A DNA stretch of 43,219 nt from positions 1 to 43,219 of the forward strand of contig NIVC01004529.1 of NCBI GenBank assembly GCA_002269645.1, read 5' to 3'. This document shows, in pieces, positions 14,957 to 39,300 of this stretch. The notes below the pieces were generated by a model. The model saw only the letters and a program-made list of their open reading frames with translations, was not told where the DNA came from and did no database searches. How positions within the stretch are numbered: position 1 is the first letter of the stretch; each line of letters starts with the position of its first letter. Made by a program: the position numbers and the translations under genes. Source of the stretch: Macrostomum lignano (Eukaryota).

Positions 14957-15551
14957 TCATTTGAAATTCGGCGGCCGTCTGCTATAGTACACAGCGCAGC
15001 TGGGACTCTTCATAGCCAGCTTATTGCTTCCGTCGGTCAGTTGGCAGCAAGCCAAAAACGGACGGACATCCACCGACCAGTGGCCGAAGATGTCCGCTCG
15101 TCGATCCGATGTTCCGGCGCCAACCGTCGGGTCCGTCAGCAGCTGACCATGATCGTCGTAGCAGCACTGCTGCCTGGCCGACGTTCCGTCAGGCAGCTCC
15201 AGCGGCCAGCTGCGCACGCAGAAGTCCGCCCCGATGTGGAAGCCGCAGTCTGGGCCGCCGCACAGCCAGGACTTCAGCCAGCTGGGTGCTGCTAGCCATG
15301 AGCCTGCATTCGTCGAACTAGACGCGGCGCCACGGCAGCAAAAGTCGCTCCGCCAGGTTCCATCGTTAACAGCAGCAGTAGCAGCGGTCGCATCGGTCGG
15401 ACAAGGATAGCGGATGCGCAGCCGGTGTAGCCAGTCTGGCACAGTTTCCGAGGCGGCTTCGGCGCGGGCCCACTCGGAGCAACGATCAGTGGCGACGTCT
15501 GACTTGGGTGGAACTTTGTTGCAGTCGCTGTCGTCGCGGCTAGTACAGAAA

Positions 15552-15584
<33 letters not shown>

Positions 15585-15664
15585 TTGTGGAGGCTGCTAA
15601 CAGAGGCTACAGACGTGGCTACCATGATGCAGCAAATCAGAATAGCGAGATAGTGCTTTGCCAT
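14957..15664 (-). CDS. Secreted AMOP-domain protein (isthmin-like, no TSR domain), 235 aa, single exon
   Basis: Hydrophobic signal peptide and a poly-Q tract, then AMOP hallmarks: C.EW..AE, CP, DFC, C.FH.GA.FCVRS, QQCCYD..G.L, GAGT, HW..DV.PF..CC, C..YY.RRPPN. Confidence 0.88.
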
Positions 15665-16400: not shown

Positions 16401-19400
16401 GCTAGTGCGCACACTCTTACGAGCGTAAATGCCCCCCATAGAACATTGTCGTTCTGCTGATTTACCTAATTGTGTCATAACTGTGCCAAATGTGCCGAAA
16501 AGGACAGCTGAGGACAATTAAAATGTGCTAATTGGCATAACTGGGGTGGTACAGTTGGCAGAATTGCAGATTTTGCTAGGACAATTATTTCCCGCCGGGA
16601 GTACGAAGTACATTTAAGTCGATGATGGTGCGCGCATCATAGTAAATATAAGAGATAGCCAATTTTGATTATATGAATCAGCAAGAAACTACATATCTCG
16701 TAGATCAAGCGTTGTGCCCGCACCATACGAATATGTACTTTTAAAGTTCAAGACTCATCAAAGCCTAATTCATCTATCCAGCTAGCTTTATTAGTACATA
16801 GCATATGTTAGTTCATACACAAACGCCTTCTTTGCCGTAGGCGCCTTCCGTTGGATCTGATGATGCCGCTGATCGTAGAATCTTGCAGTTGAATTGCAGA
16901 CTTGCCGCCCAGTATGTAGGATTTCGGCTGGAGATGGACGCCAACAGGCATTGTCTTCGCGAACAAACCGACATCCTCAGGATTGTTTGCCACGTACTGG
17001 GTGCACAAGCTGCGTCGGGTGATCCGTTGCCCACCCTCGGACACCAGCCGACTAAATGCCTCACCCGACCGGGTCAAAAAAGCCTTGCCTCCGCAGCAGC
17101 ACGTGGGACGCGACTACGCTTTTTTATCTTTTATAACAAAAAAATGTCACGAAACGCGGCGATATCGGAGCACAGTCGATCTGGTAAGGTCAGGCTGGCG
17201 CATTCAATGGTGCCTGTCTTTTTGTGAGGCACCTCCCGGATGGGCAGGCTGAAATGCGACATTGGCGACGGCAGCGTCACTGCCACCAGAGGCGGGAACC
17301 CCATCCCCAGCGATGCGGCGACGGACGATGGGGTCGTCAAAGTGGAATTGATGAAGGCCAATTCAATCAATACTGCTGCTCCCATCGTTATTACCGCGCC
17401 TGATCGCGTCAGGCCGGAACCCTGTCTGCCCGACCACCAGCGGCATCCAGCAGCATGTCGCAGAAAGCCGGCCTCACAATGCATCCCTAACGATCGGCGT
17501 TCGGCGTCGTGAAGTGTCGCTTCTCGTAGGCTCGCTGGCGGGCAGCCTTGTCCAGCATGTACTCCGCTTAAAAGGCAAATTGGAGGTCGCCTGGCAGCGG
17601 TGCGCGGAGTCACCAGCTGACCACGAAGGGCAGCAATCATGGCCTGACGTTGGCGTTGTCCATCTGTCAAATCGTACAGCGTCGCGATCCCGAGACTGCG
17701 GATGGCTATTGTTAAGCAGTTCATAGCGCCCTAGGCCGACCAGTCGCCGCCCCGCATGGATACCGCGCTCTGACTTGCGGTCAATATACTCAATTAGTTT
17801 GCTATGCACCCTTGTTGTAGCCAGCGTGGACTGGTTCCATCCCTTTCTGCCACTGCCGCAGCCGTCGCCGCCATTGTCTTCGTCATCGGACTCGACGCTA
17901 CTCGTCTGCTGTTCTGATGCAGCTGGCGCCAGACCCCTCCAGCACAAGCCGAAGGGTGCGGCAATGCTTGTGAAAGCGATGGGAATGGCGCAGATTTTTT
18001 CTGTGCGTGACTCCAAAGAGCCAACCAGATGATGCTCAGACTATCTAAGCTCTCTTCAATTGTTTTTGGAAGCTGCTGCGAAGTCGCCGACTGCTCCTCC
18101 TCCGCTGCTGCAGCTGAGCAAGCTGATCCTACTGCTGAGATGCCCGCGGCCAATGAGGCGGGAATGTGACTAGCTTCCATCGTCAACCCATTCAGATTGC
18201 GCTGCGTTACCTGTGCGTGGGTGAGTATCGGGCACAGAGAAGCTTTAGCAGGGCTCGTGCATGCCTGCTGGACTGGCTTACATGCACTCAGTCGGACACT
18301 CACCGGTAAAGTGTAAGCAGCGTCCACAGGCATTTGCTGCCCAACCATCTAAATCAGCGGTGGCCTCCAAGTGAGTGTAACTCATTCTGCATGGCGATGG
18401 TCCGCATGTCTGCCGCGGCTCTGATGACCATCGCATCCGGCGGTGTACAGAGCGAGACGCTCTGCCAAAATCTTTACCATCCCAACGAAAATTTACATGC
18501 ACATTTTAAGATTAAAATCAATTAAAGCTGCCAGAGCTGGGAATGAAGCTTAATACTCAGTGCTGCCAGTCAGCCAAGGGTATGGAAAACTTGAGGTTTC
18601 AGCCATAGACATTACTATACTGAGGAGCGTCTGTGACACAAACTCCAACCCATGGCCGATTGATTTAGTCGCACAGGACAGGCTGCGAATTTGGGGTTTA
18701 TACCATAAACTAAAAAGCAAGACTGCGCCTGACATATATCCACTAGCGCTCGACCTCGGCCTCTGGCGTGGGGCAGACATTCAAGCGGAGAGTTTGCACC
18801 ATTGACAAAAACCACTTTACCGATTGAGTTGGTAGAAAGTGGAGCCACTCGGGGCAAGCAAAAGGAGCCATTGACTCTTCTCGCAACTCTTTTCAGCTAT
18901 ACTATACTTCTGTGAGTGAGCGCGATTTGATGTTATATACTGTTACATTTGCTATACAACTATAGTGTCAACTATGATCGAAAGTCCATTGCATTGCAGC
19001 ATTGGAGCTGTGCTACAGATTAATGGAATTGAAGCAGTTGAGAGGCACTTACTTGTCTTGAACTAATTAGTACGAGTAAATGGTGTCATGAAGGCTGTAG
19101 CTACTCACTCATGCGCAATCAGCATCTCCTACCTAATTTGTGAAATTGAAAACACAAGCATTATCTAATTCTATCGTTTTTGCTATGTTTAGTAACATGT
19201 GCCTTTAAGTTTTAGAAGGCCGAATTTTGAAGGGTAGAAAATATACTTCCGGATTCCGGAAAGTTTGTTGCATAAATAATATACACGCGTGTATTCTGAG
19301 ACTGTCTGTCAAGTAGATACAGTATATAATTAGTTGTTGAAATTTTAACATTATATACATGTACGTAGATGCGAGTGCAATGTAAAATACGACAATACTT

Positions 19401-20279: not shown

Positions 20280-20357
20280 GTGAGTCCTACTGTAGCTTCT
20301 GCCGCACTGCTTTCTGCATGAAGCCCATTCACACAGTGAAACTCGTCCCTCCCACAG
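20280..20357 (+). other. Probable 5'-UTR intron of the neuropeptide gene
   Basis: AAG|GTGAGT donor and CCCTCCCACAG acceptor ending 6 nt before the ATG; 78 bp, similar in size to the short ankyrin-gene introns. Confidence 0.55.
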
Positions 20358-20363
20358 TGAGAC

Positions 20364-20864
20364 ATGACTGCCCAGCTGGTTCGTCTAACTTGGCTGATTG
20401 CAGTGGCGACCATTGCCGCCTGTGCCATTCTCTGCAGGGAAGCATCGGGGACAACAATGCCGGCAGCGTCGCCAAACTTGCATGACTGGGAGGAGCAGGC
20501 AGGCGTTGATACGGAGCTCGACTTTAATAAGCGCGGCTTTATCAACAAGCGCGGCTTCATCAACAAGCGCGGCTTCATCAACAAGCGCGGCTTTATCAAC
20601 AAGCGCAGCTTCATCAACAAGCGCGGCTTTATTAACAAGCGCGGCTTTATTAACAAGCGCGGCTTTATCAACAAGCGCGGCTTCATCAACAAGCGCGGCT
20701 TTATCAACAAGCGCGGCTTTATCAACAAGCGCGACTACTTTAAAAAGCGAGGATTTTTTGATAAGCGGCAGGACGATCTGCTTTTCCCGATGAAGGTGCG
20801 AATGTGCGTCGCCTACGGCCTGTTCTGCGATCGCATCCACGTCTGGCCGTTCCAGCAGGGATAA
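20364..20864 (+). CDS. Achatin-like (GFxD/GFxN) neuropeptide precursor, 166 aa
   Basis: Signal peptide and acidic spacer, then KR-flanked GFIN x10, SFIN x1, DYF(K), GFFD x1. Synonymous-site variation between copies (TTT/TTC, ATC/ATT) preserves the peptide. GFFD is the sequence of Aplysia GdFFD. Confidence 0.88.
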   Translation: MTAQLVRLTWLIAVATIAACAILCREASGTTMPAASPNLHDWEEQAGVDTELDFNKRGFINKRGFINKRGFINKRGFINKRSFINKRGFINKRGFINKRGFINKRGFINKRGFINKRGFINKRDYFKKRGFFDKRQDDLLFPMKVRMCVAYGLFCDRIHVWPFQQG

Positions 20865-21710
20865 ATAGGCAATCCTGCGTCTGTCTTAGAGATCGAATCC
20901 CCCACTTCTATCGCTCTCCGAAAAATACAGCGACCTTTGTTAAACAAAAACTGTGAACTGAAGGCTGAAGCGTTACCGATGAAATTCTTTCAATTTGAGC
21001 TGCTGTTTGACGATATTAACAGTGAAAAAGTTATTAAGCTACCTAAATCCAGTGACTATTTAACTGATTATAGTTGATGAAGATAATAATTAAGCTGGTG
21101 CGATCCTAGAATTCCTGGAATTTTCATGTCTACTGACCAGTGTAGTCGGGATGAAGCTGTAAAATCAAACTTGGCTTTCTATAACCAATTCAGAGCTATG
21201 AGTGTTGGCAACACCAGCGCTAGCTGTTGTCTGGGAAATTTGCTATGAAGTAATTAATAAAATATGAATAAAGTTAAATATACCTTTCTGATATCGGACA
21301 CGTTACAGTTTCCGATAAAAAGTGCACTTTTTCTGCCAACATTTTGTTTATTTGAAAATAGGCGGCTTATTAAAAATATTCCCAAAGATTATGTCTCAAA
21401 TTAGTGTCACAGGCATCAGTTTCTCATATTTCTATAGCTAGCATGGGCGGATAATTATTTGTTTAACTTTTGCAAATGATTTTCAATCCGAAGTTTGCGA
21501 ATTTCTGAAAAAGCAGGGTTATTTTTAAAAAACGTTTTCCTTACAACCTGGCTATTAGAGTTCGGTTTAGGTATATATTGCGCTTTGCAACTGAAACTGG
21601 GACTTCAGGCTGCTTTTATAAAAATTATGGTTTCGATCGTCGGAAAATTTGTTAATCTCCCAAATTCTCCCAAATAAATTCTCCCAAGAAATCTGAACAA
21701 GTCTTTAATT

Positions 21711-22137: not shown

Positions 22138-25100
22138 TCAGGCGGCAGAGTCGATGGCCTCACGCAGCTGGCGAGGAGAGCCCGGATCCACTGCCTCGGC
22201 ACCAAGCCGGTCCGCGCTCGCTTCTTCCGCTTCTGCCCTGGCTTCGGCCTCGGCCGCCAGCCTGGCTAAGTACTGAGGCGTCTCGTTGCGCTCAGTCTCA
22301 AGCAGATCGCCGACCTGGGATTACGGGTGACTAATCTGTGTAATCACAGAGAATTTTTTTAAATGAACTTGAATCGATCTGTCCTCACCCTGTAGTCATG
22401 CGTCCGTCTGCCTCGAGTTTTCAGCTTTGTTGGCGTGGGCCTGTCTAGCTGATCAATGTATTCCAGCACGCTCAGGTTGTTCTGGTGAATTTAGGCATTG
22501 ATAGAAATGCTTTTCAAGTAAATATTCCACAATTTCTCGAGGTTTATGAAGCATATGCAGCTGACTAACACTGAATCTCGTTGAAGGAAAATTTTATGCA
22601 ATTATTATTCCAATAGGATTTGGATAATAATAAAATCAGCCGCAGCTATTCAGCTATCCTGGGCTGTTCAGTCCAAGGCCTGGCGGGGGGGGGGTTCAGT
22701 CCAAGGCCTGGGGGGGTTCAGTCCAAGGCCTGGGGGGGGGTTCAGTCCAAGGCCTGGGGGGGGGTTCAGTCCAAGGCCTGGGGGGGTTCAGTCCAAGGCC
22801 TGGGGGGGGTTCAGTCCAAGGCCTGGGGGGGGGGGGGGTTCAGTCCAAGGCCTGGGGGGGGGGTTCAGTCCAAGGCCTGGGGGGGGGGGGTTCAGTCCAA
22901 GGCCTGGGGGGGGGGGTTCAGTCCAAGGCCTGGGGGGGGGTTCAGTCCAAGGCCTGGGGGAGGGGTTCAGTCCAAGGCTGGCACCCATTTTACAACTGAG
23001 TGGACTGAAGCAATGCAGAGTTAAGTGTCTTTCTTGCTCAAGGACACAAACTGTTCCGAGTTTGGTCGAGAATCGAACCCCCGACCTTCAATTCGTGAGT
23101 CCGACGCTCTGACCACCAGGCTACAAGCCCCTAACTGGATAGCACACCTTCTATGATGGATCTTAATTACTATATGTTGAATCTAAAATTATATTCCCAT
23201 TCGCTACTACTTACAGCATCTTTTGCTGACATGTCGACGCTGTTGGAAGTTGAGATCACAGATAGAGTGGCGCGCTGATCGCGGATGCAGACAGCGTAGT
23301 GCACAGGCGTCCTCAGCAGGTTGTCGCCTTTGTAGATCATCTGGGGGAACTGCTCGCAGATGGCCGCCACCATGTCGTGGTTCTCCATTAGCACGGCCAT
23401 GTGGAGAAGATTCCTGCCACGCCTGTCAACGCCGAGAGGCACGCGTTTCTCATTGGCGAACTTGACGAAGCCCTTGCGATCGTCGTTGATGACGGCCGTA
23501 TGGATTAGCTCGATTTCCTCGTGGTACTTGGGCTCCTCATCCAGCAGCTCAAGCAGCTCCTTGTAGTACCGCAGCGTGGCCAACTCTTTTGCGGTCTTGT
23601 TTCGCGACGTGCCTCGAATGTCGTTGATGTGATTGTAGCCGTCGATGATCAGCTGCTCGATGGCGTCGATGTCGCCCACGTAGGACAGATTCAGGACGAA
23701 GTCATCGATAATCTGGCCGAGACGGGAGCCTCCAACGACGCCTCCCTTGGTGCAGTAGTCGCGAGGTGTCCAACCGCGCATGTCCCGAGCGGCCACGTTG
23801 GCACCGCGGGAGAGCAGCTGCTCAACCACGCGGCACTTCGCAGCCGGATTATCGTCCTTCATCACGGCCGCGTGCAGAATGGTCCGGCCAAGCTCGTCGC
23901 GCAGTCGGACGTCCACGTGAGCCGCGATCGCTTCAGTGACGTCGCTAGCGATGTCGTCTCTGAATGCCCAGAAGGCGACGGGTCCGCACGGCGCGCACTC
24001 CTCGTACTGGACGTCAAGCCGGGCGCCGAACTGCAGCAGGAAACTGGCAATCTTGGCAGAGCCGTACTCCATCACGCTAGCTATGAGCGGGCGGGGCACG
24101 AATTCGGCTCGCCAGTCGTCCGTGAAGCCAGCAAAGTAATAGCTGGAATAGTGACGACAGGGGCCTTTCAAAGAACTGTACACCACATGTTGTGTTCTTG
24201 AGTGTTACAAGAGTAAATCATGCTTTGAGAACAATAAGCGCATAACTTATTGAGCTTATACAATAATATGAGTAGATGCGACCCCCTTGACTGCCATTGC
24301 AAGTAGTAGATGCAACCTACCGGTAGCAGGCGTTGACCTTCTTTTCTCCCGCGCCCATAGCAATGTGGTGCTTCATTCGATCCAGGTCGCCGGCAATGGA
24401 CGCGGCCGCGAATTCGCAGCCGTGCAGGCTGTCCTCCAGATGCTGCTGGATGGCTTCGTCGCCAATGTCGCGCGCCAGTTCGGCCAGGCTGCGCCCGTTC
24501 TTGGAGACGTTGACGCGGCACAGGCAGCCAAGCCAGTGGCGCACCCGCTCCAAGTCGCCGTCTTCAACTGCCACGTGCAGACCCGGCAGCAGGCGTCGGG
24601 TGTGTCGGCGCTGGCGTACCAGGTCGCCCCGGGTGGCGTAGGTGTTCTGCATGATCACGTGACCGCTGTTGGAGCGCACCGAAGCGTCCACGCCCAGGCA
24701 GATAAGATGGTCGAGTAGGATGCGGTCCGGCGGCTGACTGTAGGCTGCCAGAAGAACCGTCTCGCCTTTGTTGTTGCGAGCGTGAACATCGACACCTTCG
24801 AGAGCGGTCTTGTACATCAGGCGGATGAGTAGGCGCTTCAGCTGTAGCTCTTCCGTTGCCAGGTAGCTAGGAACAATTAGGGAATGGAGCAACAAGCATA
24901 GAACTTAGCTGGCTTGAATTGAAAATAGCTAGCTTGTAAAAATATGACTCACTGCTGCACCAAGAAGTGCAAATAGGTGCCGCCAGTCTCAGGATCCGTG
25001 CAGTCAAGATCCACCCGGTGATTGTGCAACTGCTGCCAGGCGTCCTCCAGACTGTCGGCCGACATTTCTTCCACCAGGGCCACAAATTTGGCGGATCGAA

Positions 25101-28013
25101 AGGCATTCTTGCTGCTCTCCAGTTGCTCTGCGTCGGTATGAAGCACAAAGCAGATAAATTATATTTCTGATGAAGATACTTAACATCAACATATTCCCTT
25201 TTATTTCTGTTGCCTTCGAACTTCAGAACTCACCGAAGTATTCTTCCTCGCCTATCGCACCGGCCGCTTTGAGCAGCTGATAGACTTTGTCAGCCTCGGC
25301 TATGCCAGACAGGGTCTTCACCTCGGCTAGCAGAGGCTTCGGCACCTTCTGCGACGTATCCTTAGTGCGCAGGTTCGGCTTGTCTAGCGAAGCGGGACGG
25401 TTAAATTTGTTCGAGCTTTGCAGTGAGCTGCCATCCCCTTAACAACCCGTAGATCCTGTAATATTTGTTTTCCTTTGGGAACGCCTAGAGATTGTAGTGG
25501 CTGTTCCTCTTTGAGAACAACTAAACCTGCAGTGGCTGTCCTCCATTTGAGAACCTCAAGACCCTACCCTGCAGTGGCTGTTCCTCTTTGAGAACAACTA
25601 GACCCCACCCTGCAGTGGTTGTTCCTCTTTGAGAACAACTAGACCCCACCCTGCAGTGGCTGTTCCTCTTTGAGAACAACTAGACCCCACCCTGCAGTGG
25701 CTGTCCCTTTTTTCAGAACTCTGGACTAAAGTACTGCTTGAACTCATGAGCTGTATAGCTAATTGAAATAGGGTATTTAACTCATAAACCTGAATGCAAC
25801 GCCCTGTATCCAGGTTGCTACAACGAGCGCCCCATCTCACCGGACTTCAGAGCCAGCATCTGCTTCACCCGCTTGACGTCGCAGGCGAGCGCAGCGCAGA
25901 CCAGCTCATTAGTGCTGGTGTACTTTTTCAACAGCTCAACAATCTCGTAGTTTCCCGTCTCGAAAGCCAAATCCATCAGGGTCTTGCGTCGTCGTCGACA
26001 CTCGGTTCGAACCCAGGACGTCAGGTAGCGAATCATTAACTCTTTGTCCTCTCGAGCAACTATTGATTGTTTATTTTACAAGCATGCGAGTGATAGATAG
26101 AAGCTGTAATTGATGTCCTAAGTAAAGTAAATTACTAGCTTGAAATGCACCTCTGTCCGATATGAAAGTACATGTTTCTACAGATAAAACTACCCGTATA
26201 ATTTAGGTAGATAAGTTAAAACCGATTTTGAGACTAGAAGATCTTTTTGAGAGCATTCAAACAAAATTAAGTCAAATAAAGCTATATTTATAGCATTCAA
26301 AAATGCAGAACACAGGTTTTTTCTGTAATTAATGAGCCTGTAATCCTGAGCTGAAAATGCGAGAATTCGATCACGTGACAGAAACCCGAAAGGAAAAAAC
26401 TGTGCGCGCTCGCGACCGTGAGTGGTGGTGACTGCCAGATTCGAAAAGCTGCGTGCATGATTAGCATAAATAATGAGCAACCTTCCTTTCAGTGGGGCAT
26501 GCGGTTCGGTGACAGACAGTGTGTGAGCACAGAAACGAAAAGACAGAAATGAAAAAACAAACAATACAATGAAATAGAGTCAAACAAACGTCAGTCGAAG
26601 AGTTCAATATAAATTTTCCTGTGATCAGTTTTGCAAATCAACAATAAATTACACCATTTTTACCTGCATACCAGATGCCGTCGCAGACTTGAATAAAAGT
26701 TTTTTAGGATTAATTTCAGTGTTTTGGACTTATAAAATACATGTTTAAATGTGCTGTTTGAATTTAAAGTCGTTATTCTGCTCTTGATCAATATTAAAAT
26801 TAAATTTTTATAGGAATTCACTTATTTATTGCGGAATAATGATGCGGCTCGATCAGCGTCTCTTCCGGTGACGTCACTCACCTGCGCTCCACAGGCTGCA
26901 CTTTGCACCTTTCTGACCTCGCACCAGCCAGGCCTTGTGCTGAGCGTTGTCGTGGATGACCCGCGAGTTCATCTCGTTCGTGATGCCCGGGTCGATGCCT
27001 GATTGGTTGGAGGTGTTTCAGATGCACTCTTTCAGCCTTTGACTTCGTGCGCATTTAATTGACTTTTGCAAACGTTACGAGTAGCTAACGGACTTGTACG
27101 GACTGCATTGATGCCGCGTAATGGATTCATACAGACTTAAACGTGTACTCAGATGAGTACCACCGATTCTAATATTTACTTTCATATATCCCACAGGCTC
27201 TACCAGACTTCACGAGTGTCTAACAGACTCTTAGACTTTGCCTATATCTAACAGACTCTTACAGACTTTACCTATATCTAACAGACTCTTACAAACTTTA
27301 CCTATATCTAACAGACTCTTACAGATTTTACCTATATCTAACAGACTCTTACAGACTTTACCTATACCTAACAGACTCTTACAGACTTTACCTATATCTA
27401 ACAGACTCTTACAGACTTTACCTATATCTAACAGACTCTTACAGATTTTACTTATATCTAACAGACTCTTACAGACTTTACCTATACCTAACAGACTCTT
27501 ACAGACTTTACCTATATATAACAGACTCTTACAGACTTTACCTATATATAACAGACTCTTACAGACTTTACCTAAACCTGACATCCTTTTACAGACATGA
27601 AAACAGGCATATTAAGCAGTAAAGCAGTCAGAACCAATCGTTCAAAGAGATAGATAAGAAAACTGCAATAACTGGCGCGCACCCAGTCGGATCAGGTGTT
27701 GCACCAGCCGGTCGCCCAGCGGCCTGAAGCAGGCGGTGTGCAGCGCCGTGTTGCCCACTCGATTCTGCGCGTTCACGTCGCAGCCACGAAGTGCCAGCTT
27801 GTACAGCAGCGGCACCGCCGGCCGGACGTCGCCGCCGCACCTGCCGGCCAGAGCCTTTAGATTTAGCACCACCAAGTGCAGGTAGCTGTTCTGCTGATCG
27901 GTGGATCGACGCCGAACCTCGGTGAGCTCGAGCTCGTCAAGCAGGCTGAGGGCTCGCGCGTAGTTCGCCCGGCTGGGATTGCAGATGAGGCGGTAGAGCT
28001 CTGTGTCCTCCAT
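22138..28013 (-). CDS. Multi-exon ankyrin-repeat protein (~929 aa) with an internally duplicated module
   Basis: Phase-consistent GT-AG model: 28013-27683, 26998-26882, 26059-25841, 25437-25234, 25127-24953, 24866-24321, 24142(or 24175)-23215, 22481-22389, 22314-22138 (TGA). Ankyrin motifs include DVNAQNRVGNTALH, DVHARNNKGETVL, RDELGRTILHAAV, GANVAARDMRGWTP, DRRGRNLLHMAV, DNLLRTPVHYAV. The exon 4 and exon 7 acceptors are less certain. Confidence 0.85.
22622..23132 (-). mobile_element. tRNA-derived CORE-SINE in an ankyrin-gene intron
   Basis: Minus strand shows A box TAGCCTGGTGG (23123-23113), B box GGTTCGATTC (23079-23070), CORE-like GTGTCCTTGAGCAAG..ACACTTAACTCTG..TTCAGT..TGTAAAATGGG, and a (TTA)n tail. 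Confidence 0.78.
22667..22980. repeat. 13 copies of TTCAGTCCAAGGCCT(G)n with long variable G runs
   Basis: Counted in sequence; lies within the 3' part of the SINE. Confidence 0.92.
25490..25710. repeat. ~41-bp tandem repeat (4-5 copies), intronic
   Basis: Unit CCTGCAGTGGCTGTTCCTCTTTGAGAACAACTAGACCCCAC. Confidence 0.85.
27222..27585. repeat. 30-bp tandem repeat (~12 copies), ankyrin intron 1
   Basis: Unit CCTATATCTAACAGACTCTTACAGACTTTA. Confidence 0.93.
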
Positions 28014-29472: not shown

Positions 29473-31317
29473 CTAGATGAGGTTAGATGGGGCTAGATGG
29501 GGCTAGATGGGGCTAGATGGGGCTAAATGGGGATAGATGGGGCTAGATGGGGCTAAATGGGGATAGATGGGGCTAGATGGGGTTAGATGGGGCTAGATGG
29601 GGCTAGATGGTGATAAATGGGGTTGATGGGGCTAGATGGGGATAAATGGGGCTAGATAGAGATAGATGGGGCTAGATGGTGCTAGATGAGGCTAGATGGG
29701 GCTAGATGGGGCTAGATGGGGCTAGATGGTGCTAAATGGGGATAAATGGGGCTAGATGGAGATAGATGGGGCTAGATGGTGCTAGATGAGGCTAGATGGG
29801 GCTAGATGGGGTTAGATGGTGATAAATAGGGTTGATGGGGCTAAATGGGGATAAATGGGGCTAGATGGAGATAGATGGGGCTAGATGGTGCTAGATGAGG
29901 CTACATGGGGCTAGATGGGGCTAGATGGTGCTAAATGGGGATAAATGGGGCTAGATGGAGATAGATGGGGCTAGATGGGGCTAGATGGGGTGAGATGGGG
30001 CTAGATGGGGCTAGATGGGGTTAGATGGTGATAAATGGGGTTGATGGGGCTAGATGGGGCTAGATGGTGATAAATGGGGTTGATGGGGCTAGATGGGGTT
30101 AGATGGTGATAAATGGGGTTGATGGGGCTAGATGGGGTTAGATGGTGATAAATAGGGTTGATGGGGCTAGATGGGGCTAGATGGTGATAAATGGGGTTGA
30201 TGGGGCTAGATGGGGCTAGATGGGGCTAGATGGTGATAAATGGGGTTGATGGGGCTAGATGGGGTTAGATGGTGATAAATGGGGTTGATGGGGCTAGATG
30301 GGGTTAGATGGTGATAAATGGGGTTGATGGGGCTAGATGGGGCTAGATGGTGATAAATGGGGTTGATGGGGCTAGATGGGGCTAGATGGGGCTAGATGGT
30401 GATAAATGGGGTTGATGGGGCTAGATGGGGTTAGATGGTGATAAATGGGGTTGATGGGGCTAGATGGGGCTAGATGGTGATAAATGGGGTTGATGGGGCT
30501 AGATGGGGCTAGATGGGGCTAGATGGTGATAAATGGGGTTGATGGGGCTAGATGGGGTTAGATGGTGATAAATGGGGTTGATGGGGCTAGATGGGGCTAG
30601 ATGGTGATAAATGGGGTTGATGGGGCTAGATGGGGTTAGATGGTGATAAATGGGGTTGATGGGGCTAGATGGGGCTAGATGGTGATAAATGGGGTTGATG
30701 GGGCTAGATGGGGCTAGATGGTGATAAATGGGGTTGATGGGGCTAGATGGGGCTAGATGGGGCTAGATGGTGATAAATAGGGTTGATGGGGCTAGATGGG
30801 GCTAGATGGTGATAAATGGGGTTGATGGGGCTAGATGGGGCTAGATGGTGATAAATGGGGTTGATGGGGCTAGATGGGGCTAGATGGTGATAAATGGGGT
30901 TGATGGGGCTAGATGGGGCTAGATGGTGATAAATGGGGTTGATGGGGCTAGATGGGGCTAGATGGTGATAAATGGGGTTGATGGGGCTAGATGGGGTTAG
31001 ATGGTGATAAATGGGGTTGATGGGGCTAGATGGGGCTAGATGGTGATAAATGGGGTTGATGGGGCTAGATGGGGTTAGATGGTGATAAATGGGGTTGATG
31101 GGGCTAGATGGGGCTAGATGGTGATAAATGGGGTTGATGGGGCTAGATGGGGCTAGATGGTGATAAATGGGGTTGATGGGGCTAGATGGGGTTAGATGGT
31201 GATAAATGGGGTTGATGGGGCTAGATGGGGCTAGATGGTGATAAATGGGGTTGATGGGGCTAGATGGGGCTAGATGGTGATAAATGGGGTTGATGGGGCT
31301 AGATGGGGTTAGATGAT
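29473..31317. repeat. G-rich 10-bp satellite GCTAGATGGG with higher-order repeats
   Basis: Monomer variants GGGGCTAGAT, GGGGTTAGAT, GGTGATAAAT and the 9-bp GGGGTTGAT, recurring as ~39/49-bp higher-order blocks over ~1.85 kb. Confidence 0.95.
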
Positions 31318-32240: not shown

Positions 32241-32627
32241 ATGCGGCTGATCCCGTTGCTAAGCCTGTCGCTAATCCTTGCAATCGGAGGCGCTCGGGCC
32301 AGCTGGCCAGCCAATCACATCAACAGCCTGTCCGACATCCGCTGCCGCCAATGGTGCACCTTCCGGTTTCACTCGGGCTCGCGTCGCGTGTTTGTCGGTC
32401 CCGACGCCGAGCTGCGGCCGTTTCTTGTCAGCAACTATGTCAAGCGAATGCAGGACAGGCATCGGGCCGAGCTGACAGCCGAGATGAGCGACAACATGCG
32501 CCGGTTCCGCGAGTACTACTCGAGCCAGCGGGCGGGTGGCACGCTCCGCGAGTCCGGTGACAGCACCCTGGGCTGGTTCAACCTGTACCACGATTACCTG
32601 CACTGTCTGCGGGACTGCTTCGACTGA
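32241..32627 (+). CDS. Small secreted protein of unknown family (128 aa; CRQWC ... CLRDC)
   Basis: Clear signal peptide MRLIPLLSLSLILAIGGARA, GC3-rich codons like the other genes, and four Cys as two CX3C motifs at opposite ends of the mature chain. Confidence 0.78.
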   Translation: MRLIPLLSLSLILAIGGARASWPANHINSLSDIRCRQWCTFRFHSGSRRVFVGPDAELRPFLVSNYVKRMQDRHRAELTAEMSDNMRRFREYYSSQRAGGTLRESGDSTLGWFNLYHDYLHCLRDCFD

Positions 32628-32696: not shown

Positions 32697-33051
<355 letters not shown>

Positions 33052-33311: not shown

Positions 33312-36300
33312 ACTACTAAGGGATTCCGTAAGGCGCGATTTTGGAGGTGGGGTGGGTGTCAACCCTCCTCGCCTCTCATTGGCTGGCGCCCCGATCACTA
33401 GGTGATCGATACCCGTATCGATATCGGCGACTCGAACCCGCGACCCTCCCCAGCCGCAGGCGCACCTACCGATATTAGATCCCAATAAATCAATCAGATC
33501 CCAAATCAATCAGATCCCAAATCAATCAGATCCCAAGCGCACCCTCCCGAGCCGCAGGCGCCCATGCAGCAGGCGCCCATGCCGCAGGCACCCCGAGTGT
33601 ACACTCTCCCGATATGTGTGTACACCGATATGTAGTCATCGATACGGGCCTCTTCCCCTCTCTCACCTACATCTCAACTAGCGAAATCGAACCCAGGTCG
33701 CGCCCATACTAGGACACTACACGGTTGTGGGGTATAGGGAGCGAGAAGTTTCAACCCTAACGCTGACGCAGCCCTGTACAGTGAGAGTGTACGGGCAGAG
33801 AGGGGTGGGGCGGACAGAGAACCAGCCACTAGGTTGTTATACTGTTGAAGCATAGGGAGCGAGAAGTTTTAACCCCGATGCTGACGCAGCCCTGTACACT
33901 GAGCGTGTACGGGCAGAGGGTGGGTGGAAAGAGATGTGAATAACACAGCCTGCTGCAGGAGCCGGATAGAGAGGCGCATGCTAGGACAGAGAGGTAGTGT
34001 GAGTCACACACACCCCACAGAGAAAGCCATACAGAGGATAGAGAGCTCCCTCCCCAGTTGCAGGGGACAGAGAGGCAGGCAGGGTATGCAGGGGCATGCG
34101 AACCGTCAAGGGGCCACGCGAGGATAGAGTGGAGGAGCAGAGATGTGTTTGGACAGAGAGCCAGCCACGTGTGCGTAGTGTGAGGGAACAGAAACATATG
34201 GAGCAGGAGGGAGATAGGAAGCAAACGCGCAGGGTAAGGGAGCCATGCAGCAGGGAGCAGTGTACAGTGAGACACGGGCAGGGGTGGAGCCGTGCGTGGA
34301 CAGAGCTGAACGGCACGGTCAGCTGCAGGAATAAGATGATAGAGAGGCGCGGAGGGGACAGAGAGCAGTGTGCAGGGTAGGCAGCCACGCAGGCTGGGGA
34401 ACAGAGAGGCGCGTGTCAGCCAGTTACAGCCCGGGACAGAGAAGTATGAAGGGGGCCTGGGACAGAGAAGTATGAAGGGGGGCCTGGGACAGAGTTGCGA
34501 GCAAGGCACAGAGAGAGGTAGGGTCCGGTAGCTATGTATAGGCAGGGACCCACGCGAGGGCAGGACAGGGCATGCAAGGCATGCAAATTACATGCAAGGG
34601 CAGTGAGGTGTGCGCGGAGGGAGACAGAGAGCAGTGTGTAGGGGTAGGTAACAGCAAACTTTAGTAGAGGCGCGTGCGGGGACGGAGAAACCAGTCTGAG
34701 CGTACAGAGACGTTACAGAGAGGTACACAAACAGAGACCAAAGCGGGCAGAGCACGTGTAGGGACAGAGACGTGAGGGAGAATAGACCAAAACACGCTAT
34801 GTATTTTCAAAAGTTGGTTTTAGTGCAGCATATTTAATAGCGGGTAGTATAATAGTATGTACATAGTAGGTATAATGGTAGTAATAATAGTAAGTATATT
34901 AGCCCAAAAGGTAGGCTAAAACAGGCTAAACTGTGTGTACGCATCCTCATCACCCCACAAGCCCCCTCTCCCGCCAGACTCACTCTTCCATACCCTCCTG
35001 TATTGCTGTATGAAGGAAAATATAGTGTAAAAATACAGATCTTAACCGTCAGACCGCTGAAATCAGGGCACACTAGAGGGGTTTCGGGGTCTGCATGCTC
35101 TATGTAAGCTGTTTCAATTATGTTTTGAAAAAACTAGGGGCTTAAATACAACGTTTTATTCAAAAAGTAGGTTATTTTAATGAAATAGCTGACACAATCA
35201 TTGTCGAGAGTAGAAATTTTTATAAGAAACCAGGCATTTTAGCAAAAATAAACCTTCAAACCACATAAAATTGAATAAAAAGCAGACATTTTCAATTATA
35301 AACCGCAAGTATTTTAATAGAAAAGTAAGCAAACAAGGCACAAAACCAGCAAATTTTACCTTTTTATTTTAATGTTACTGATAAGGTAGAGAGTAGAAAC
35401 TTGTGAGCTGTACGGAGTTAGAAAGTATTAACCATTATGTATCGTATGAATTATTAGTTCAGTACCAGCCATTGGTCAAGCGAGCATTTATGAAGTTATT
35501 ACGAGTGATGAAGGGATAGAGAGCTATATACAGGAAGACAGTATCCTTCTAAACCACCACGAACAGATTGCTAATAGAGATAAGCTTTGTCTGTGTGCAG
35601 TATGAGTAAGCGAAGGCGGGGCAAATACTTTTCCACATGCCGGACAGAACAGTATTGTGCTAGGATTTCTCTCGAAATCACGGTACGTTACTAGTTTTTA
35701 TCACACCATCCAGATGCGTCAACTAGTCAGCAGTAGTCATTTATATGTTATTAGAACTTACAAACCCAGGTCAAGTAAATATTACAAAGAGTATATTACG
35801 TACACACGCCAACTCCGAATACCAAGCCATACTAGTCTACTTGCAGTGCTCCTGGAGGGAAGGGACGGCGGGGTGTACACCCGGCAGGGTGGGCGTCCAG
35901 CGAGTGTACATCTGACAGGATGGGTGTTCAGCAAGTATACATCTGACAGGGTGGGCGTTCAGCAAGTGTACCTTCAGCGTCGAGTAGGTGTACACCCGTC
36001 AGTGGGGAACTCCACCCCTCCCACCAATGTCGTGTGCATGCGGTTAGTCAGTATAGTGGTGGGGTAGACGGTGCAGGAAGGAAACCCAGATGCTGACGCT
36101 GCCCTGTACAGCGAGCAACCAGCCCCCTGTAGCAGGAGGGGGACAGAGAGTGCGTGGAGGCAGTAGGAGATAGAGGACGCTACCCGGCATGTCGCAGCAC
36201 GCGGCGCGGGACAGAGGCAGTGTGTAAGTCACCCCCGCGGAGAGAGCTCCCCTGGCAGGAGGCGCGGGACAGAGAGGCGGTGAATCACACCCCACGGAGA

Positions 36301-39300
36301 GAGCCGTACAACGAGCTTCCCCACCCGAGTCCGGTAAATATTACAGAGTATTACGTGCACACACCAGCCCTGAATACCAAGCCATACTAGTCTATCTGCA
36401 GTGCTCCCAGAGGGAAGGGATGGTCAGGAGTTACACACCAAGAATGCATTCATACAAAGAGTACACAACTCGAGCCCAGACACCAAGTCACAGTCTACTT
36501 ACAGTAGAGATGGTAGATTAATAGCAAGATTATATTACAATTAGACCTCTCTAGCACATGAGGAGTGAAATTCAATAATAATTGAATTCAATAATAATAC
36601 AACATTTAGACGTAGTAATTTAATTACAAAATACCACTAACACTGAGCCAACGAATTGTAGGTTACAAAGGAGTTGCCACTCATATGGAAAGCCAGTATA
36701 ATGCAGGTGTGTATTATTAAAACATAGACAAAAACGATGCAGACGTATATACACACTATTGATTTTGTACATGTACATTTCGGCATATTACCACACATCG
36801 CGGGCACATATTATATATCGGGGGATAGGTTAAAATACACACATCGTAGATGTAGAAGCAGACACAATGCAGGAAAATTATGATACGAGTGTACATATTA
36901 GTGCGTAAAAGTATCATATTATGACACCCTGTAGCACATATTGACATAATGCAGGGGAAAATATTGACAGAAATAGTACACAATTGTAGAGGTAACAACC
37001 AGCCAACTAGTAAGGGCATCCAGCACTTGTTCAGGTTTTTTTTATTTCGAGACGAGTGTCATGCCCCCGCAAGAGATCTTATCAGAAATTTGTTGAACTC
37101 CACTGCAACTCTCCCCAGAGCCTCCAAATGGGAGTTTTAACACTTGAGGGGATCCCGCTCAATGTACAGTGCGGACGGAGAGGGGTAACAGAAAGCGCTG
37201 CATCAGACCGCGGAGCTGCATTCCTCCCCGAGGTAGGCGCGTCAGCTCCCACTCCTCATTTAACCATCAAGTAAACTAAAGAAGTCAAGCAGAAAGCCTT
37301 ACAATCACCCGCAACCAGCACAAGTAAGAGTACTTTCCACTAGAGAGCCATAGTGCAAGATTCGCGAGCCAAGTTGAAGAAGCACACCAAATTACACTAA
37401 AGACATATGTATTAAAAAGCATACCGGCACCTCTACAAAAACACAGTATGTACCGATTAAAGTTGCTTTTGGTGCAGTGTATTTAATAAAAAGCAGGTAC
37501 CTAACACAAAAGTAGGCATCAATGCAGTGCACGGGCTAAACTGTATTTACAAACGCAGGGCAACGAACTACACACAATGTAGCGCATAGACATAATTGTA
37601 CACATAAATGTACGCAATTTCCGGTATATAGGACCAAATGTACGCAAATGTACACAATGTACACAAACACACACACACTCAGGCGTATTCACAGCAAGAG
37701 CTTCCTGCCGATGGCGCCATCGCCTGCGGCGATCGGTGCTGCAGGATGCGCTGCAGGATGCGCCTGAGTGTGTGTGTGTTTGTGTGCATTGTGTACATTT
37801 GCGTACATTTGGTCCTATATACCGGAGATTGCGTACATTTATGTGTACAATTATGTCTATGCGCTACATTGTGTGTAGTTCGTTGCCCTGCGTTTGTAAA
37901 TACAGTTTAGCCCGTGCACTGCATTGATGCCTACTTTTGTGTTAGGTACCTGCTTTTTATTAAATACACTGCACCAAAAGCAACTTTAATCGGTACATAC
38001 TGTGTTTTTGTAGAGGTGCCGGTATGCTTTTTAATACATATGTCTTTAGTGTAATTTGGTGTGCTTCTTCAACTTGGCTCGCGAATCTTGCACTATGGCT
38101 CTCTAGTGGAAAGTACTCTTACTTGTGCTGGTTGCGGGTGATTGTAAGGCTTTCTGCTTGACTTCTTTAGTTTACTTGATGGTTAAATGAGGAGTGGGAG
38201 CTGACGCGCCTACCTCGGGGGAGGAATGCAGCTCCGCGGTCTGATGCAGCGCTTTCTGTTACCCCTCTCCGTCCGCACTGTACATTGAGCGGGATCCCCT
38301 CAAGTGTTAAAACTCCCATTTGGAGGCTCTGGGGAGAGTTGCAGTGGAGTTCAACAAATTTCTGATAAGATCTCTTGCGGGGGCATGACACTCGTCTCGA
38401 AATAAAAAAAACCTGAACAAGTGCTGGATGCCCTTACTAGTTGGCTGGTTGTTACCTCTACAATTGTGTACTATTTCTGTCAATATTTTCCCCTGCATTA
38501 TGTCAATATGTGCTACAGGGTGTCATAATATGATACTTTTACGCACTAATATGTACACTCGTATCATAATTTTCCTGCATTGTGTCTGCTTCTACATCTA
38601 CGATGTGTGTATTTTAACCTATCCCCGATATATAATATGTGCCCGCGATGTGTGGTAATATGCCGAAATGTACATGTACAAAATCAATAGTGTGTATATA
38701 CGTCTGCATCGTTTTTGTCTATGTTTTAATAATACACACCTGCATTATACTGGCTTTCCATATGAGTGGCAACTCCTTTGTAACCTACAATTCGTTGGCT
38801 CAGTGTTAGTGGTATTTTGTAATTAAATTACTACGTCTAAATGTTGTATTATTATTGAATTCAATTATTATTGAATTTCACTCCTCATGTGCTAGAGAGG
38901 TCTAATTGTAATATAATCTTGCTATTAATCTACCATCTCTACTGTAAGTAGACTGTGACTTGGTGTCTGGGCTCGAGTTGTGTACTCTTTGTATGAATGC
39001 ATTCTTGGTGTGTAACTCCTGACCATCCCTTCCCTCTGGGAGCACTGCAGTAGACTAGTATGGCTTGGTATTCAGGGCTGGTGTGTGCACGTAATACTCT
39101 GTAATATTTACCGGACTCGGGTGGGGAAGCTCGTTGTACGGCTCTCTCCGTGGGGTGTGATTCACCGCCTCTCTGTCCCGCGCCTCCTGCCAGGGGAGCT
39201 CTCTCCGCGGGGGTGACTTACACACTGCCTCTGTCCCGCGCGCGTGCTGCGACATGCCGGGTAGCGTCCTCTATCTCCTACTGCCTCCACGCACTCTCTG

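What the first reader, a model, noticed from the sequence alone, without database searches (positions are those of the whole stretch)
20364..20864. Achatin-family precursor with a new GFIN tetrapeptide and one exact GFFD
Seen: 10x GFIN, 1x SFIN, DYF(K) and GFFD, all between KR sites with no amidation glycine. Knowledge: achatins are non-amidated tetrapeptides (snail GdFAD, Aplysia GdFFD, annelid GFGD, hemichordate/xenacoelomorph GFGN) whose active form in molluscs and annelids carries D-Phe at position 2, made by an unidentified isomerase. Inference: GFIN is an unusual achatin variant (bulky Ile3 with Asn4). This animal may make D-amino-acid neuropeptides, which would be notable if the species is a flatworm.
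Basis: partly seen in the sequence, partly recalled or inferred. Interest (0 to 1): 0.75.

Follow-up and report, generated by a model that had tools for sequence, protein, structure and literature searches.

The report
Flatworm achatin-like neuropeptide precursor gene
This is a real gene of the flatworm Macrostomum lignano that encodes a secreted precursor carrying many copies of the tetrapeptide GFIN and one GFFD; by sequence it fits the achatin neuropeptide family, which had not been recognised in flatworms.

Summary
Window 20364-20864 (+) is a 166-aa ORF with a signal peptide, an acidic spacer, 10 GFIN, 1 SFIN, DYFK and GFFD. Every peptide lies between Lys-Arg sites and none has an amidation glycine. 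A Cys-containing tail follows. The window is contig NIVC01004529.1 of Macrostomum lignano, a flatworm. I found two further copies of the gene on syntenic contigs of the same assembly, with 18 and 37 repeat units. Their non-repeat coding sequence is identical although the flanks differ by 0.9-1.5%. All length differences are multiples of 18 nt, and 63 of 66 units encode GFIN. The GenBank gene models for this assembly come from RNA-seq. The gene is therefore real and under constraint. Its architecture and the G-F-x-N/D motif match published achatin precursors from a chiton, nemerteans and Xenoturbella. Ile at position 3 is new. Family membership rests on this short motif and the precursor layout; no statistical sequence homology exists. 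Whether M. lignano has an achatin receptor could not be resolved here, and D-Phe and neuronal expression cannot be tested with these tools. I found no earlier description. Verdict: a probable first flatworm achatin-type precursor, a new member of a known kind, of moderate interest.

The parts
20280..20357 (+). Putative 78-nt intron in the 5' leader (GTGAGT...TCCCACAG). The AG acceptor 6 nt before the ATG could instead be a spliced-leader trans-splice acceptor.
   Evidence: Sequence reading. Identical in all three gene copies. Inferred; no transcript was read here.
20364..20864 (+). Complete CDS of the precursor (166 aa plus TAA stop)
   Evidence: An in-frame TGA lies at 20358-20360. Annotated as a gene in the GenBank record, whose gene models derive from RNA-seq.
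20364..20450 (+). Signal peptide, residues 1-29. Arg7, then the hydrophobic core LTWLIAVATIAACAILC. Predicted cleavage after Ala-Ser-Gly29.
   Evidence: Hydropathy profile. The cleavage site is inferred from the -3/-1 rule; no predictor was available.
20451..20528 (+). Acidic N-terminal spacer peptide (TTMPAASPNLHDWEEQAGVDTELDFN)
   Evidence: Identical in all three copies.
20529..20726 (+). Eleven 18-nt units, each encoding KR plus a tetrapeptide: 10 GFIN and 1 SFIN (the SFIN unit is at 20601-20618).
   Evidence: The other two copies have 18 units (17 GFIN, 1 GLIN) and 37 units (36 GFIN, 1 SFIN).
20727..20744 (+). Diverged unit KR-DYFK. After cleavage at the following KKR and trimming of basic residues it would give DYF (or DYFK).
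   Evidence: Conserved in all three copies.
20745..20768 (+). Diverged unit KR-GFFD followed by a KR site. GFFD is identical to the Aplysia achatin-like peptide.
   Evidence: Conserved in all three copies. The K, R, G and F codons differ from the consensus unit only synonymously.
20769..20861 (+). C-terminal 31-aa peptide QDDLLFPMKVRMCVAYGLFCDRIHVWPFQQG. It has an N-terminal Gln after KR, a Cys-x6-Cys pair and a terminal Gly before the stop. It may be a second peptide carrying pyroglutamate, a disulfide and an amide.
   Evidence: Identical in all three copies. The modifications are inferred only, and no family match was found.
21256..21272 (+). Two AATAAA polyadenylation signals about 400 nt after the stop codon
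   Evidence: Also present in the second copy. Their use is inferred.

Best explanation
This is an expressed gene of the flatworm Macrostomum lignano. It encodes a secreted multi-copy peptide precursor of the achatin type.

Proposed mechanism:
1. The signal peptide sends the protein into the regulated secretory pathway (inferred).
2. Prohormone convertases cut after each Lys-Arg, and a carboxypeptidase removes the basic residues (inferred from the consensus sites).
3. This copy releases 10 GFIN, 1 SFIN, 1 DYF(K) and 1 GFFD as free-acid peptides, plus an N-terminal spacer and a Cys-containing C-terminal peptide. The two other copies carry 17 and 36 GFIN.
4. By analogy with molluscs, annelids and hemichordates, the residue at position 2 may be converted to the D-form, and the peptides may act on an achatin-type rhodopsin GPCR. 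This step is speculative and was not tested.

Shown here: the gene structure, the peptide content, the conservation across three copies, and the fit to the family motif. Inferred: processing, secretion, orthology, D-isomerisation and the receptor.
For: Sequence and anatomy.

Species and annotation. The window is NIVC01004529.1 of GCA_002269645.1, and its neighbours match M. lignano proteins. The GenBank CDS set of this assembly was built from RNA-seq transcripts; novel transcripts below 0.5 RPKM were discarded.

Constraint. Two more copies lie in the same gene order (AMOP / 197-aa ORF / precursor / ankyrin gene / 128-aa ORF) on NIVC01001985.1 (208 aa) and NIVC01001520.1 (322 aa).
- Their 303 nt of non-repeat CDS are identical, while the flanks differ by 0.9-1.5%. 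About 2.8-4.6 differences are expected per pair, giving P(0) of 0.01-0.06.
- 63 of 66 units encode GFIN.
- All length changes are multiples of 18 nt.

Fit to the family (one search compares the peptides).
- Published achatin precursors have the same layout and overlapping peptides: chiton GFGD/GFGN/GFGQ/LFFD/LFGN on one precursor, nemertean GFGD/GFGE/GYGE/GFVD/GISD, and Xenoturbella and nemertodermatid GFGN.
- Asn4 is the residue of the GFGN form shared by deuterostomes, priapulids and xenacoelomorphs.
- GFFD equals the Aplysia peptide.

Other support.
- The Aplysia isomerase accepts Phe, Tyr, Trp and Leu at position 2. These are the residue types at position 2 of GFIN, SFIN, GFFD, DYF and GLIN.
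- M. lignano also keeps vasotocin precursors that were not found in other flatworms, so retention of another ancestral peptide is plausible.
Against: - Homology rests on four residues and the architecture. phmmer against 5.8 billion clustered proteins found nothing. Against 1.84 billion representative proteins it found only low-complexity repeat noise: no hit had tandem KR-flanked tetrapeptides of the achatin type on a pattern screen of all 109, and the four the looser pattern flagged were repeat noise when read.
- Short peptides converge easily.
- Ile at position 3 has no precedent in the sequences I could read.
- No flatworm appeared among the 120 best relatives of the Platynereis achatin receptor. 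That list was cut at 352 bits, so this is uninformative rather than negative.
- Schmidtea was reported to lack achatin, so the family may have been lost before flatworms diversified.
- Repeat numbers (11, 18, 37) could be partly long-read assembly error.
- No direct evidence for processing, tissue of expression or chirality.
Confidence: 0.6

Rival explanations
1. A lineage-specific multi-copy neuropeptide precursor that converged on G-F-x-N/D. It would be made, processed and secreted as in the best explanation, but it would not be orthologous to achatin and would signal through an unrelated receptor, with all-L peptides.
For: No sequence homology is detectable outside the peptides. Clade-specific multi-copy peptides are common: Thiel et al. 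report 14 xenacoelomorph-specific types, including acoel MxGFG peptides that share GFG with achatin but are not classed as achatins. The dominant peptide has an unprecedented Ile3. Schmidtea was reported to lack achatin, and the planarian and schistosome prohormone catalogue holds no KRGF precursor.
Against: Strict tetrapeptide length, lack of amidation, Gly1, aromatic residue 2 and Asn/Asp4 are all met together. A conserved GFFD identical to the Aplysia peptide sits on the same precursor in all three copies. A chiton achatin precursor mixes D- and N-ending tetrapeptides in the same way.
Confidence: 0.28
2. A secreted repetitive protein that is not cut into peptides, for example a gland, adhesive, eggshell or seminal-fluid product, in which the KR-x4 periodicity has a structural role.
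For: M. lignano has many tandem repeats (15% of the genome), and this window has about a dozen arrays. There are no expression-site data. Repeat number varies threefold between copies, as in structural repeat proteins.
Against: Fourteen canonical dibasic KR sites are spaced exactly four residues apart. The KR codons are kept through synonymous changes in the diverged units. The protein is small and has no structural-domain hit. The layout is indistinguishable from known multi-copy neuropeptide precursors.
Confidence: 0.08
3. A non-coding 18-nt minisatellite whose open frame is an accident of a period divisible by three.
For: Other arrays in the window with periods of 21, 30 or 42 nt also give ORFs of more than 110 aa in several frames. 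All three forward frames and two reverse frames are open across this array.
Against: Only this frame has an ATG plus a signal peptide and extends 55 aa before and 45 aa after the eleven-unit array. The non-repeat CDS is identical in three copies although the flanks differ by 0.9-1.5%. There are no frameshifting indels in 66 units. Gene models derived from transcripts exist on all three contigs.
Confidence: 0.02

Closest known systems
Achatin / achatin-like neuropeptide precursors of molluscs, annelids and nemerteans (GdFAD in Achatina, GdFFD and GdYFD in Aplysia, GFGD in Platynereis and chiton, GFGD/GFGE/GFVD in nemerteans)
   Same: A signal peptide, an acidic spacer, then directly abutting KR-flanked, non-amidated tetrapeptides with Gly1, aromatic residue 2 and an acidic or amide residue 4. 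One peptide (GFFD) is identical to the Aplysia peptide. N- and D-ending forms are mixed on one precursor, as in the chiton Acanthochitona.
   Different: The dominant peptide is GFIN; Ile3 is not seen elsewhere, and Asn4 is rare in spiralians. There are up to 36 copies per precursor and three gene copies. The C-terminal peptide with a Cys-x6-Cys pair is not seen in the precursors I read. D-Phe and the receptor are unverified.
GFGN-type achatins of hemichordates, cephalochordates, priapulids, Xenoturbella and nemertodermatids
   Same: Tetrapeptide, non-amidated, Gly-Phe-x-Asn. Saccoglossus achatin-type receptors were identified by Bauknecht and Jekely 2015, who also found the D-amino acid conserved between protostome and deuterostome achatins.
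   Different: Gly3 rather than Ile3. In the Xenoturbella and nemertodermatid precursors read here, the few copies are separated by spacers or carry N-terminal extensions.
Acoel MxGFG multi-copy peptides (Thiel et al. 2018)
   Same: A clade-specific multi-copy precursor that shares part of the achatin motif.
   Different: Those peptides vary in length and sequence between copies and are not tetrapeptides. The M. lignano peptides are strictly tetrapeptides.
Other flatworm multi-copy precursors (M. lignano allatostatin-A-like GLLamide precursor; Schmidtea spp-15 and ppp-1)
   Same: The same general build: a signal peptide followed by many tandem paracopies between dibasic sites.
   Different: Those peptides are longer. 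The GLLamide and spp-15 peptides are amidated through a Gly before the basic site. None has the G-F-x-N/D motif.

Membership tests
Achatin-type neuropeptide precursor | N-terminal signal peptide (secretory precursor) | tested here: met
   Arg7 followed by a 17-residue hydrophobic core and an Ala-Ser-Gly motif. Judged by hydropathy and rule-based reading only.
Achatin-type neuropeptide precursor | Several copies of a tetrapeptide, each bounded by dibasic cleavage sites | tested here: met
   Thirteen four-residue units between 14 KR sites. Twenty and 39 such units in the two other copies.
Achatin-type neuropeptide precursor | Peptide motif Gly - aromatic (Phe/Tyr) - x - Asp/Asn/Glu | tested here: met
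   GFIN and GFFD fit at positions 1, 2 and 4 when compared with 10 distinct published tetrapeptides. The minor variants SFIN, GLIN and DYFK deviate at one or more positions, as the minor variants DFGD, LFGN and GISD do in published precursors. Ile3 is new.
Achatin-type neuropeptide precursor | No C-terminal Gly before the basic site (free-acid, non-amidated peptides) | tested here: met
   Every unit ends N-KR, D-KR or K-KR.
Achatin-type neuropeptide precursor | Statistically detectable precursor homology to known members | tested here: not met
   No hit at E<=0.01 in 5.8 billion clustered proteins. The 109 hits in 1.84 billion representatives are repeat noise. This is usual for precursors of very short peptides and is not used to define the family in the literature read here.
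Achatin-type signalling system | An achatin-clade rhodopsin GPCR in the same genome | tested here: inconclusive
   The Platynereis receptor AKQ62997 found 360 relatives, but only the best 120 (352 bits or more) are listed. None of the listed ones carrying a source name is a flatworm. The M. lignano proteome could not be searched on its own.
Achatin-type signalling system | D-aromatic residue at position 2 of the mature peptide, required for receptor activation | not testable with these tools
   Requires chiral LC-MS or ion mobility. The literature states that achatin receptors respond only to the D-form, and that the Aplysia isomerase accepts Phe, Tyr, Trp and Leu at position 2.
Achatin-type signalling system | Expression in neurons or neurosecretory cells | not testable with these tools
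   There is only indirect evidence of transcription: the GenBank gene models derive from RNA-seq.

The most novel reading that the evidence does not exclude
Macrostomum lignano makes D-Phe-containing GdFIN and GdFFD from this precursor and senses them through a conserved achatin GPCR. That would be the first D-amino-acid neuropeptide system in Platyhelminthes. The animal has transgenesis, and the substrate gene is very highly repeated (63 GFIN copies across three loci), which could make the long-sought neuropeptide L/D isomerase genetically tractable.
Probability: 0.3. Interest if true: 0.7.

Novelty: new member of a known kind. Interest (0 to 1): 0.5.

Why it matters
Achatin is one of about 30 ancestral bilaterian peptide systems and the best-studied case in which an L-to-D switch turns a neuropeptide on. 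Flatworms were not sampled in the spiralian surveys I read, and the planarian was reported to lack a recognisable achatin orthologue. A macrostomid achatin-type gene would show that the system survived into Platyhelminthes and was lost later. It would add a new ligand variant (Ile3/Asn4 next to a conserved GFFD) for structure-activity work on the receptor. It would also offer a small, transparent, transgenic animal in which to look for the peptide isomerase, whose protein identity is still unknown. If the resemblance is convergent, the gene is still an abundant, undescribed flatworm peptide precursor.

Tried and rejected
- Pfam scan of the precursor. It gave only a borderline hit to phage family Pam3_gp59 (27 bits, exactly at the cut-off, over the acidic spacer and first repeats) and noise. 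I rejected these as compositional.
- Rfam and tRNA scans of the window: nothing.
- phmmer of the precursor against both large protein libraries. There were no true relatives. I read 45 of the 109 hits and screened all 109 by pattern; none was a dibasic-flanked tetrapeptide precursor.
- Degenerate DNA pattern for KRGFINKRGFINKR in JGI metagenomes: 0 matches.
- Receptor search with the Platynereis achatin receptor. It was uninformative for M. lignano because only 120 hits are listed. I mapped motifs kept in at least 90% of the 122 aligned receptors (GYT..WQRK before TM5, CK..Y.Q..TL.STTFIL in TM3, CW.PYF in TM6). I judged that a second search could not push a fast-evolving flatworm sequence into the top 120, so the third protein search was not spent.
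- Literature. No paper in the library has GFIN as a peptide or links achatin with Macrostomum, apart from an unrelated figure legend. Koziol et al. 2016 (the flatworm neuropeptide catalogue) and Bauknecht and Jekely 2015 are not held, so a mention there cannot be excluded.
I reached the other gene copies through cluster members of neighbouring genes instead.

Full report
**1. Observation**

Window 20364-20864 (+) is a single uninterrupted ORF of 166 codons plus TAA. Its translation has these parts:
- a signal-like N-terminus (Arg7, then the hydrophobic run LTWLIAVATIAACAILC, then Ala-Ser-Gly);
- a 26-residue acidic spacer;
- eleven 6-residue units KR-GFIN, of which the fifth is KR-SFIN;
- KR-DYFK, KR-GFFD and a final KR;
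- a 31-residue tail, QDDLLFPMKVRMCVAYGLFCDRIHVWPFQQG.

No unit has a Gly before its basic pair.

**2. Is it more than chance?**

The eleven units are an 18-nt tandem array (11.4 copies, 94% match, no indels). The window has about a dozen other minisatellites. Arrays whose period is a multiple of three produce long ORFs in several frames, and all three forward frames are open across this array. Repetition and openness alone therefore prove nothing. Four other points do:
- Only this frame starts with an ATG followed by a signal peptide, and it extends 55 codons before and 45 codons after the eleven-unit array. An in-frame TGA lies two codons upstream of the ATG, immediately after an AG acceptor.
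- The ten GFIN units differ only at synonymous third positions (TTT/TTC, ATC/ATT).
- In the diverged GFFD unit and the KR that follows it, the K, R, G and F codons differ from the consensus unit only by synonymous changes (CGC>CGA, GGC>GGA, CGC>CGG). Positions 3 and 4 change (Ile>Phe, Asn>Asp). By my own count about 22% of single-base changes in those codons would be synonymous, so three out of three has a probability of about 0.01.
- The paralogue comparison in section 4.

**3. Source**

An exact look-up places the ORF on NIVC01004529.1. That contig is 43,219 bp, so it is the whole window, and it belongs to assembly GCA_002269645.1. Neighbouring ORFs cluster with proteins named Macrostomum lignano. 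The organism is a free-living macrostomid flatworm.

The 'called genes' of this record include a 911-aa ankyrin gene spread over 5.9 kb, so they are the spliced GenBank annotation. According to the genome paper, that annotation is a filtered RNA-seq transcriptome assembly in which novel transcripts below 0.5 RPKM were discarded. The precursor is one of these gene models, which is indirect evidence of transcription.

**4. Three copies**

The same paper reports heavy redundancy in the assembly, because the sequenced DV1 line carries extra large chromosomes. Using cluster members of the neighbouring genes as handles, I fetched two syntenic regions.
- NIVC01001985.1 carries a 208-aa copy with 17 GFIN, 1 GLIN, DYFK and GFFD.
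- NIVC01001520.1 carries a 322-aa copy with 36 GFIN, 1 SFIN, DYFK and GFFD.

The gene order is the same on all three contigs: AMOP protein, 197-aa ORF, precursor, ankyrin gene, 128-aa ORF. The comparison shows:
- The 303 nt of non-repeat coding sequence are identical in all three copies.
- About 3.7 kb of flanking DNA differs by 0.9-1.5% per pair. That predicts 2.8-4.6 differences in 303 nt, so P(0) is 0.01-0.06 per pair. Over the three-taxon tree I estimate about 6 expected differences and P of about 0.003.
- Of 66 repeat units, 63 encode GFIN, 2 encode SFIN and 1 encodes GLIN.
- Every length difference is a multiple of 18 nt.

The gene is thus conserved at the protein level while the array expands and contracts. 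Part of the copy-number difference could be long-read assembly error.

**5. What it most likely is and does**

The layout is that of a multi-copy neuropeptide or peptide-hormone precursor. The inferred steps are signal peptide removal, cleavage after each Lys-Arg by prohormone convertases, and removal of the basic residues by a carboxypeptidase. These would release free-acid GFIN (the major product), SFIN or GLIN (minor), DYF or DYFK, one GFFD, the acidic spacer and the C-terminal peptide.

The C-terminal peptide begins with Gln after KR, contains a Cys-x6-Cys pair and ends with Gly before the stop. It could therefore be a second peptide with pyroglutamate, a disulfide and an amide. This is inference only. 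It is identical in all three copies.

**6. Comparison with achatins**

- Achatins are 'usually tetrapeptides'. GFGN is shared by Saccoglossus, Branchiostoma, priapulids, Xenoturbella and nemertodermatids (sequences).
- Nemertean achatin precursors encode GFGD, GFGE, GYGE, GFVD and GISD as abutting KR-flanked units.
- A chiton precursor mixes GFGD, GFGN, GFGQ, DFGD, LFFD and LFGN.
- The Aplysia precursor gives GdFFD, GdYFD and SdYADSKDEESNAALSDFA.

Set against ten distinct published tetrapeptides, GFIN and GFFD match at positions 1, 2 and 4. Position 3 already varies (Gly, Phe, Val, Ser; also Ala in Achatina, from my own knowledge), but Ile is new. Mixing N- and D-ending forms on one precursor has a precedent in the chiton.

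Achatin receptors are reported to respond only to the D-form. An isomerase activity from the Aplysia CNS converts GFFD and accepts Phe, Tyr, Trp and Leu at position 2, but not Ala, Ser, Asp or Lys. Every M. lignano unit has one of the accepted residue types at position 2. The enzyme's protein identity remains unknown.

**7. What could not be shown**

- There is no statistical homology to any protein. This is expected for such precursors, but it means orthology rests on the motif and the architecture.
- The receptor test was inconclusive. The Platynereis receptor found 360 relatives, only the 120 best are listed, and all the listed ones that carry a name are annelid, mollusc, nemertean, arthropod or hemichordate.
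- Chirality, processing and the site of expression need experiments.

**8. Prior knowledge and novelty**

- Schmidtea was reported to have no recognisable achatin orthologue.
- The Schmidtea and Schistosoma prohormone catalogue contains no KRGF precursor.
- The spiralian surveys I read either did not sample flatworms or used only Schmidtea, Schistosoma and Taenia.
- No paper in the library prints the sequence or names a GFIN peptide.
- Koziol et al. 2016 was not available. From memory, its abstract lists pyrokinin, CCAP, myomodulin, NPY, NKY and SIFamide orthologues, but not achatin.
- M. lignano is already known to keep vasotocin precursors that were not found in other flatworms, which makes retention of achatin plausible.

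I therefore rate this a new member of a known kind.

**9. Verdict**

| Explanation | Probability |
|---|---|
| Real, constrained, transcribed, secreted multi-copy peptide precursor | about 0.9 |
| That precursor is an achatin-type orthologue | about 0.6 |
| That precursor is a convergent, flatworm-specific peptide | about 0.28 |
| Unprocessed repetitive secreted protein | about 0.08 |
| Non-coding minisatellite | about 0.02 |

Interest is 0.5. The finding fills a gap in the distribution of an ancestral bilaterian peptide system and offers a tractable animal for the D-amino-acid question, but the exciting parts are still untested.

Noticed in passing
window 33547-41897: A near-perfect palindrome. 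Nested inverted arms of 0.4-1.65 kb are 99-100% complementary around a centre near 37723 and fill most of the last 10 kb of the contig. It duplicates ORFs in mirror image (35657-36067 and 39377-39787). It looks like a long-read assembly artefact rather than biology.
   Followed up: partly
window 32241-32627 (+): A 128-aa annotated protein with a signal-like N-terminus and two CX3C pairs (IRCRQWC ... LHCLRDC). It has no Pfam hit. A copy in the same 90%-identity cluster (PAA66937.1) lies at the syntenic place on NIVC01001520.1. Function unknown.
   Followed up: partly
window 20769-20861 (+): The C-terminal peptide of the precursor starts with Gln after KR, has a Cys-x6-Cys pair and ends Gly-stop. 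These are hallmarks of a pyroglutamyl, disulfide-bonded, amidated peptide. It is identical in all three gene copies, and no family match was found.
   Followed up: partly
L002 4680-5306 (-) and L005 5977-6945 (-): The repeat array differs strongly between the three gene copies (11, 18 and 37 units), always in frame. One copy has GLIN instead of SFIN, and the SFIN unit sits at a different place in the third copy.
   Followed up: yes
window 17131-17724 (-); L005 10001-10174: A 197-aa annotated ORF without any Pfam hit lies next to the precursor. Its counterpart on NIVC01001520.1 is annotated as only 57 aa (PAA66934.1), so one copy may be decaying or the gene model may be doubtful.
   Followed up: no
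window 14957-15664 (-): A small secreted protein (235 aa) with a polyglutamine run and an AMOP domain (E = 3e-9). A 233-aa paralogue, PAA61939.1, exists.
   Followed up: no
window 22138-28013 (-): A multi-exon 911-aa ankyrin-repeat gene lies directly downstream of the precursor, on the opposite strand. It is present in all three syntenic regions.
   Followed up: no
window 29473-31315 and 32697-33051: A 1.8-kb minisatellite (10/39/78-nt periods) and a perfect (TAGA)89 microsatellite. Together with about ten other arrays, they show how repeat-rich this genome is.
   Followed up: no
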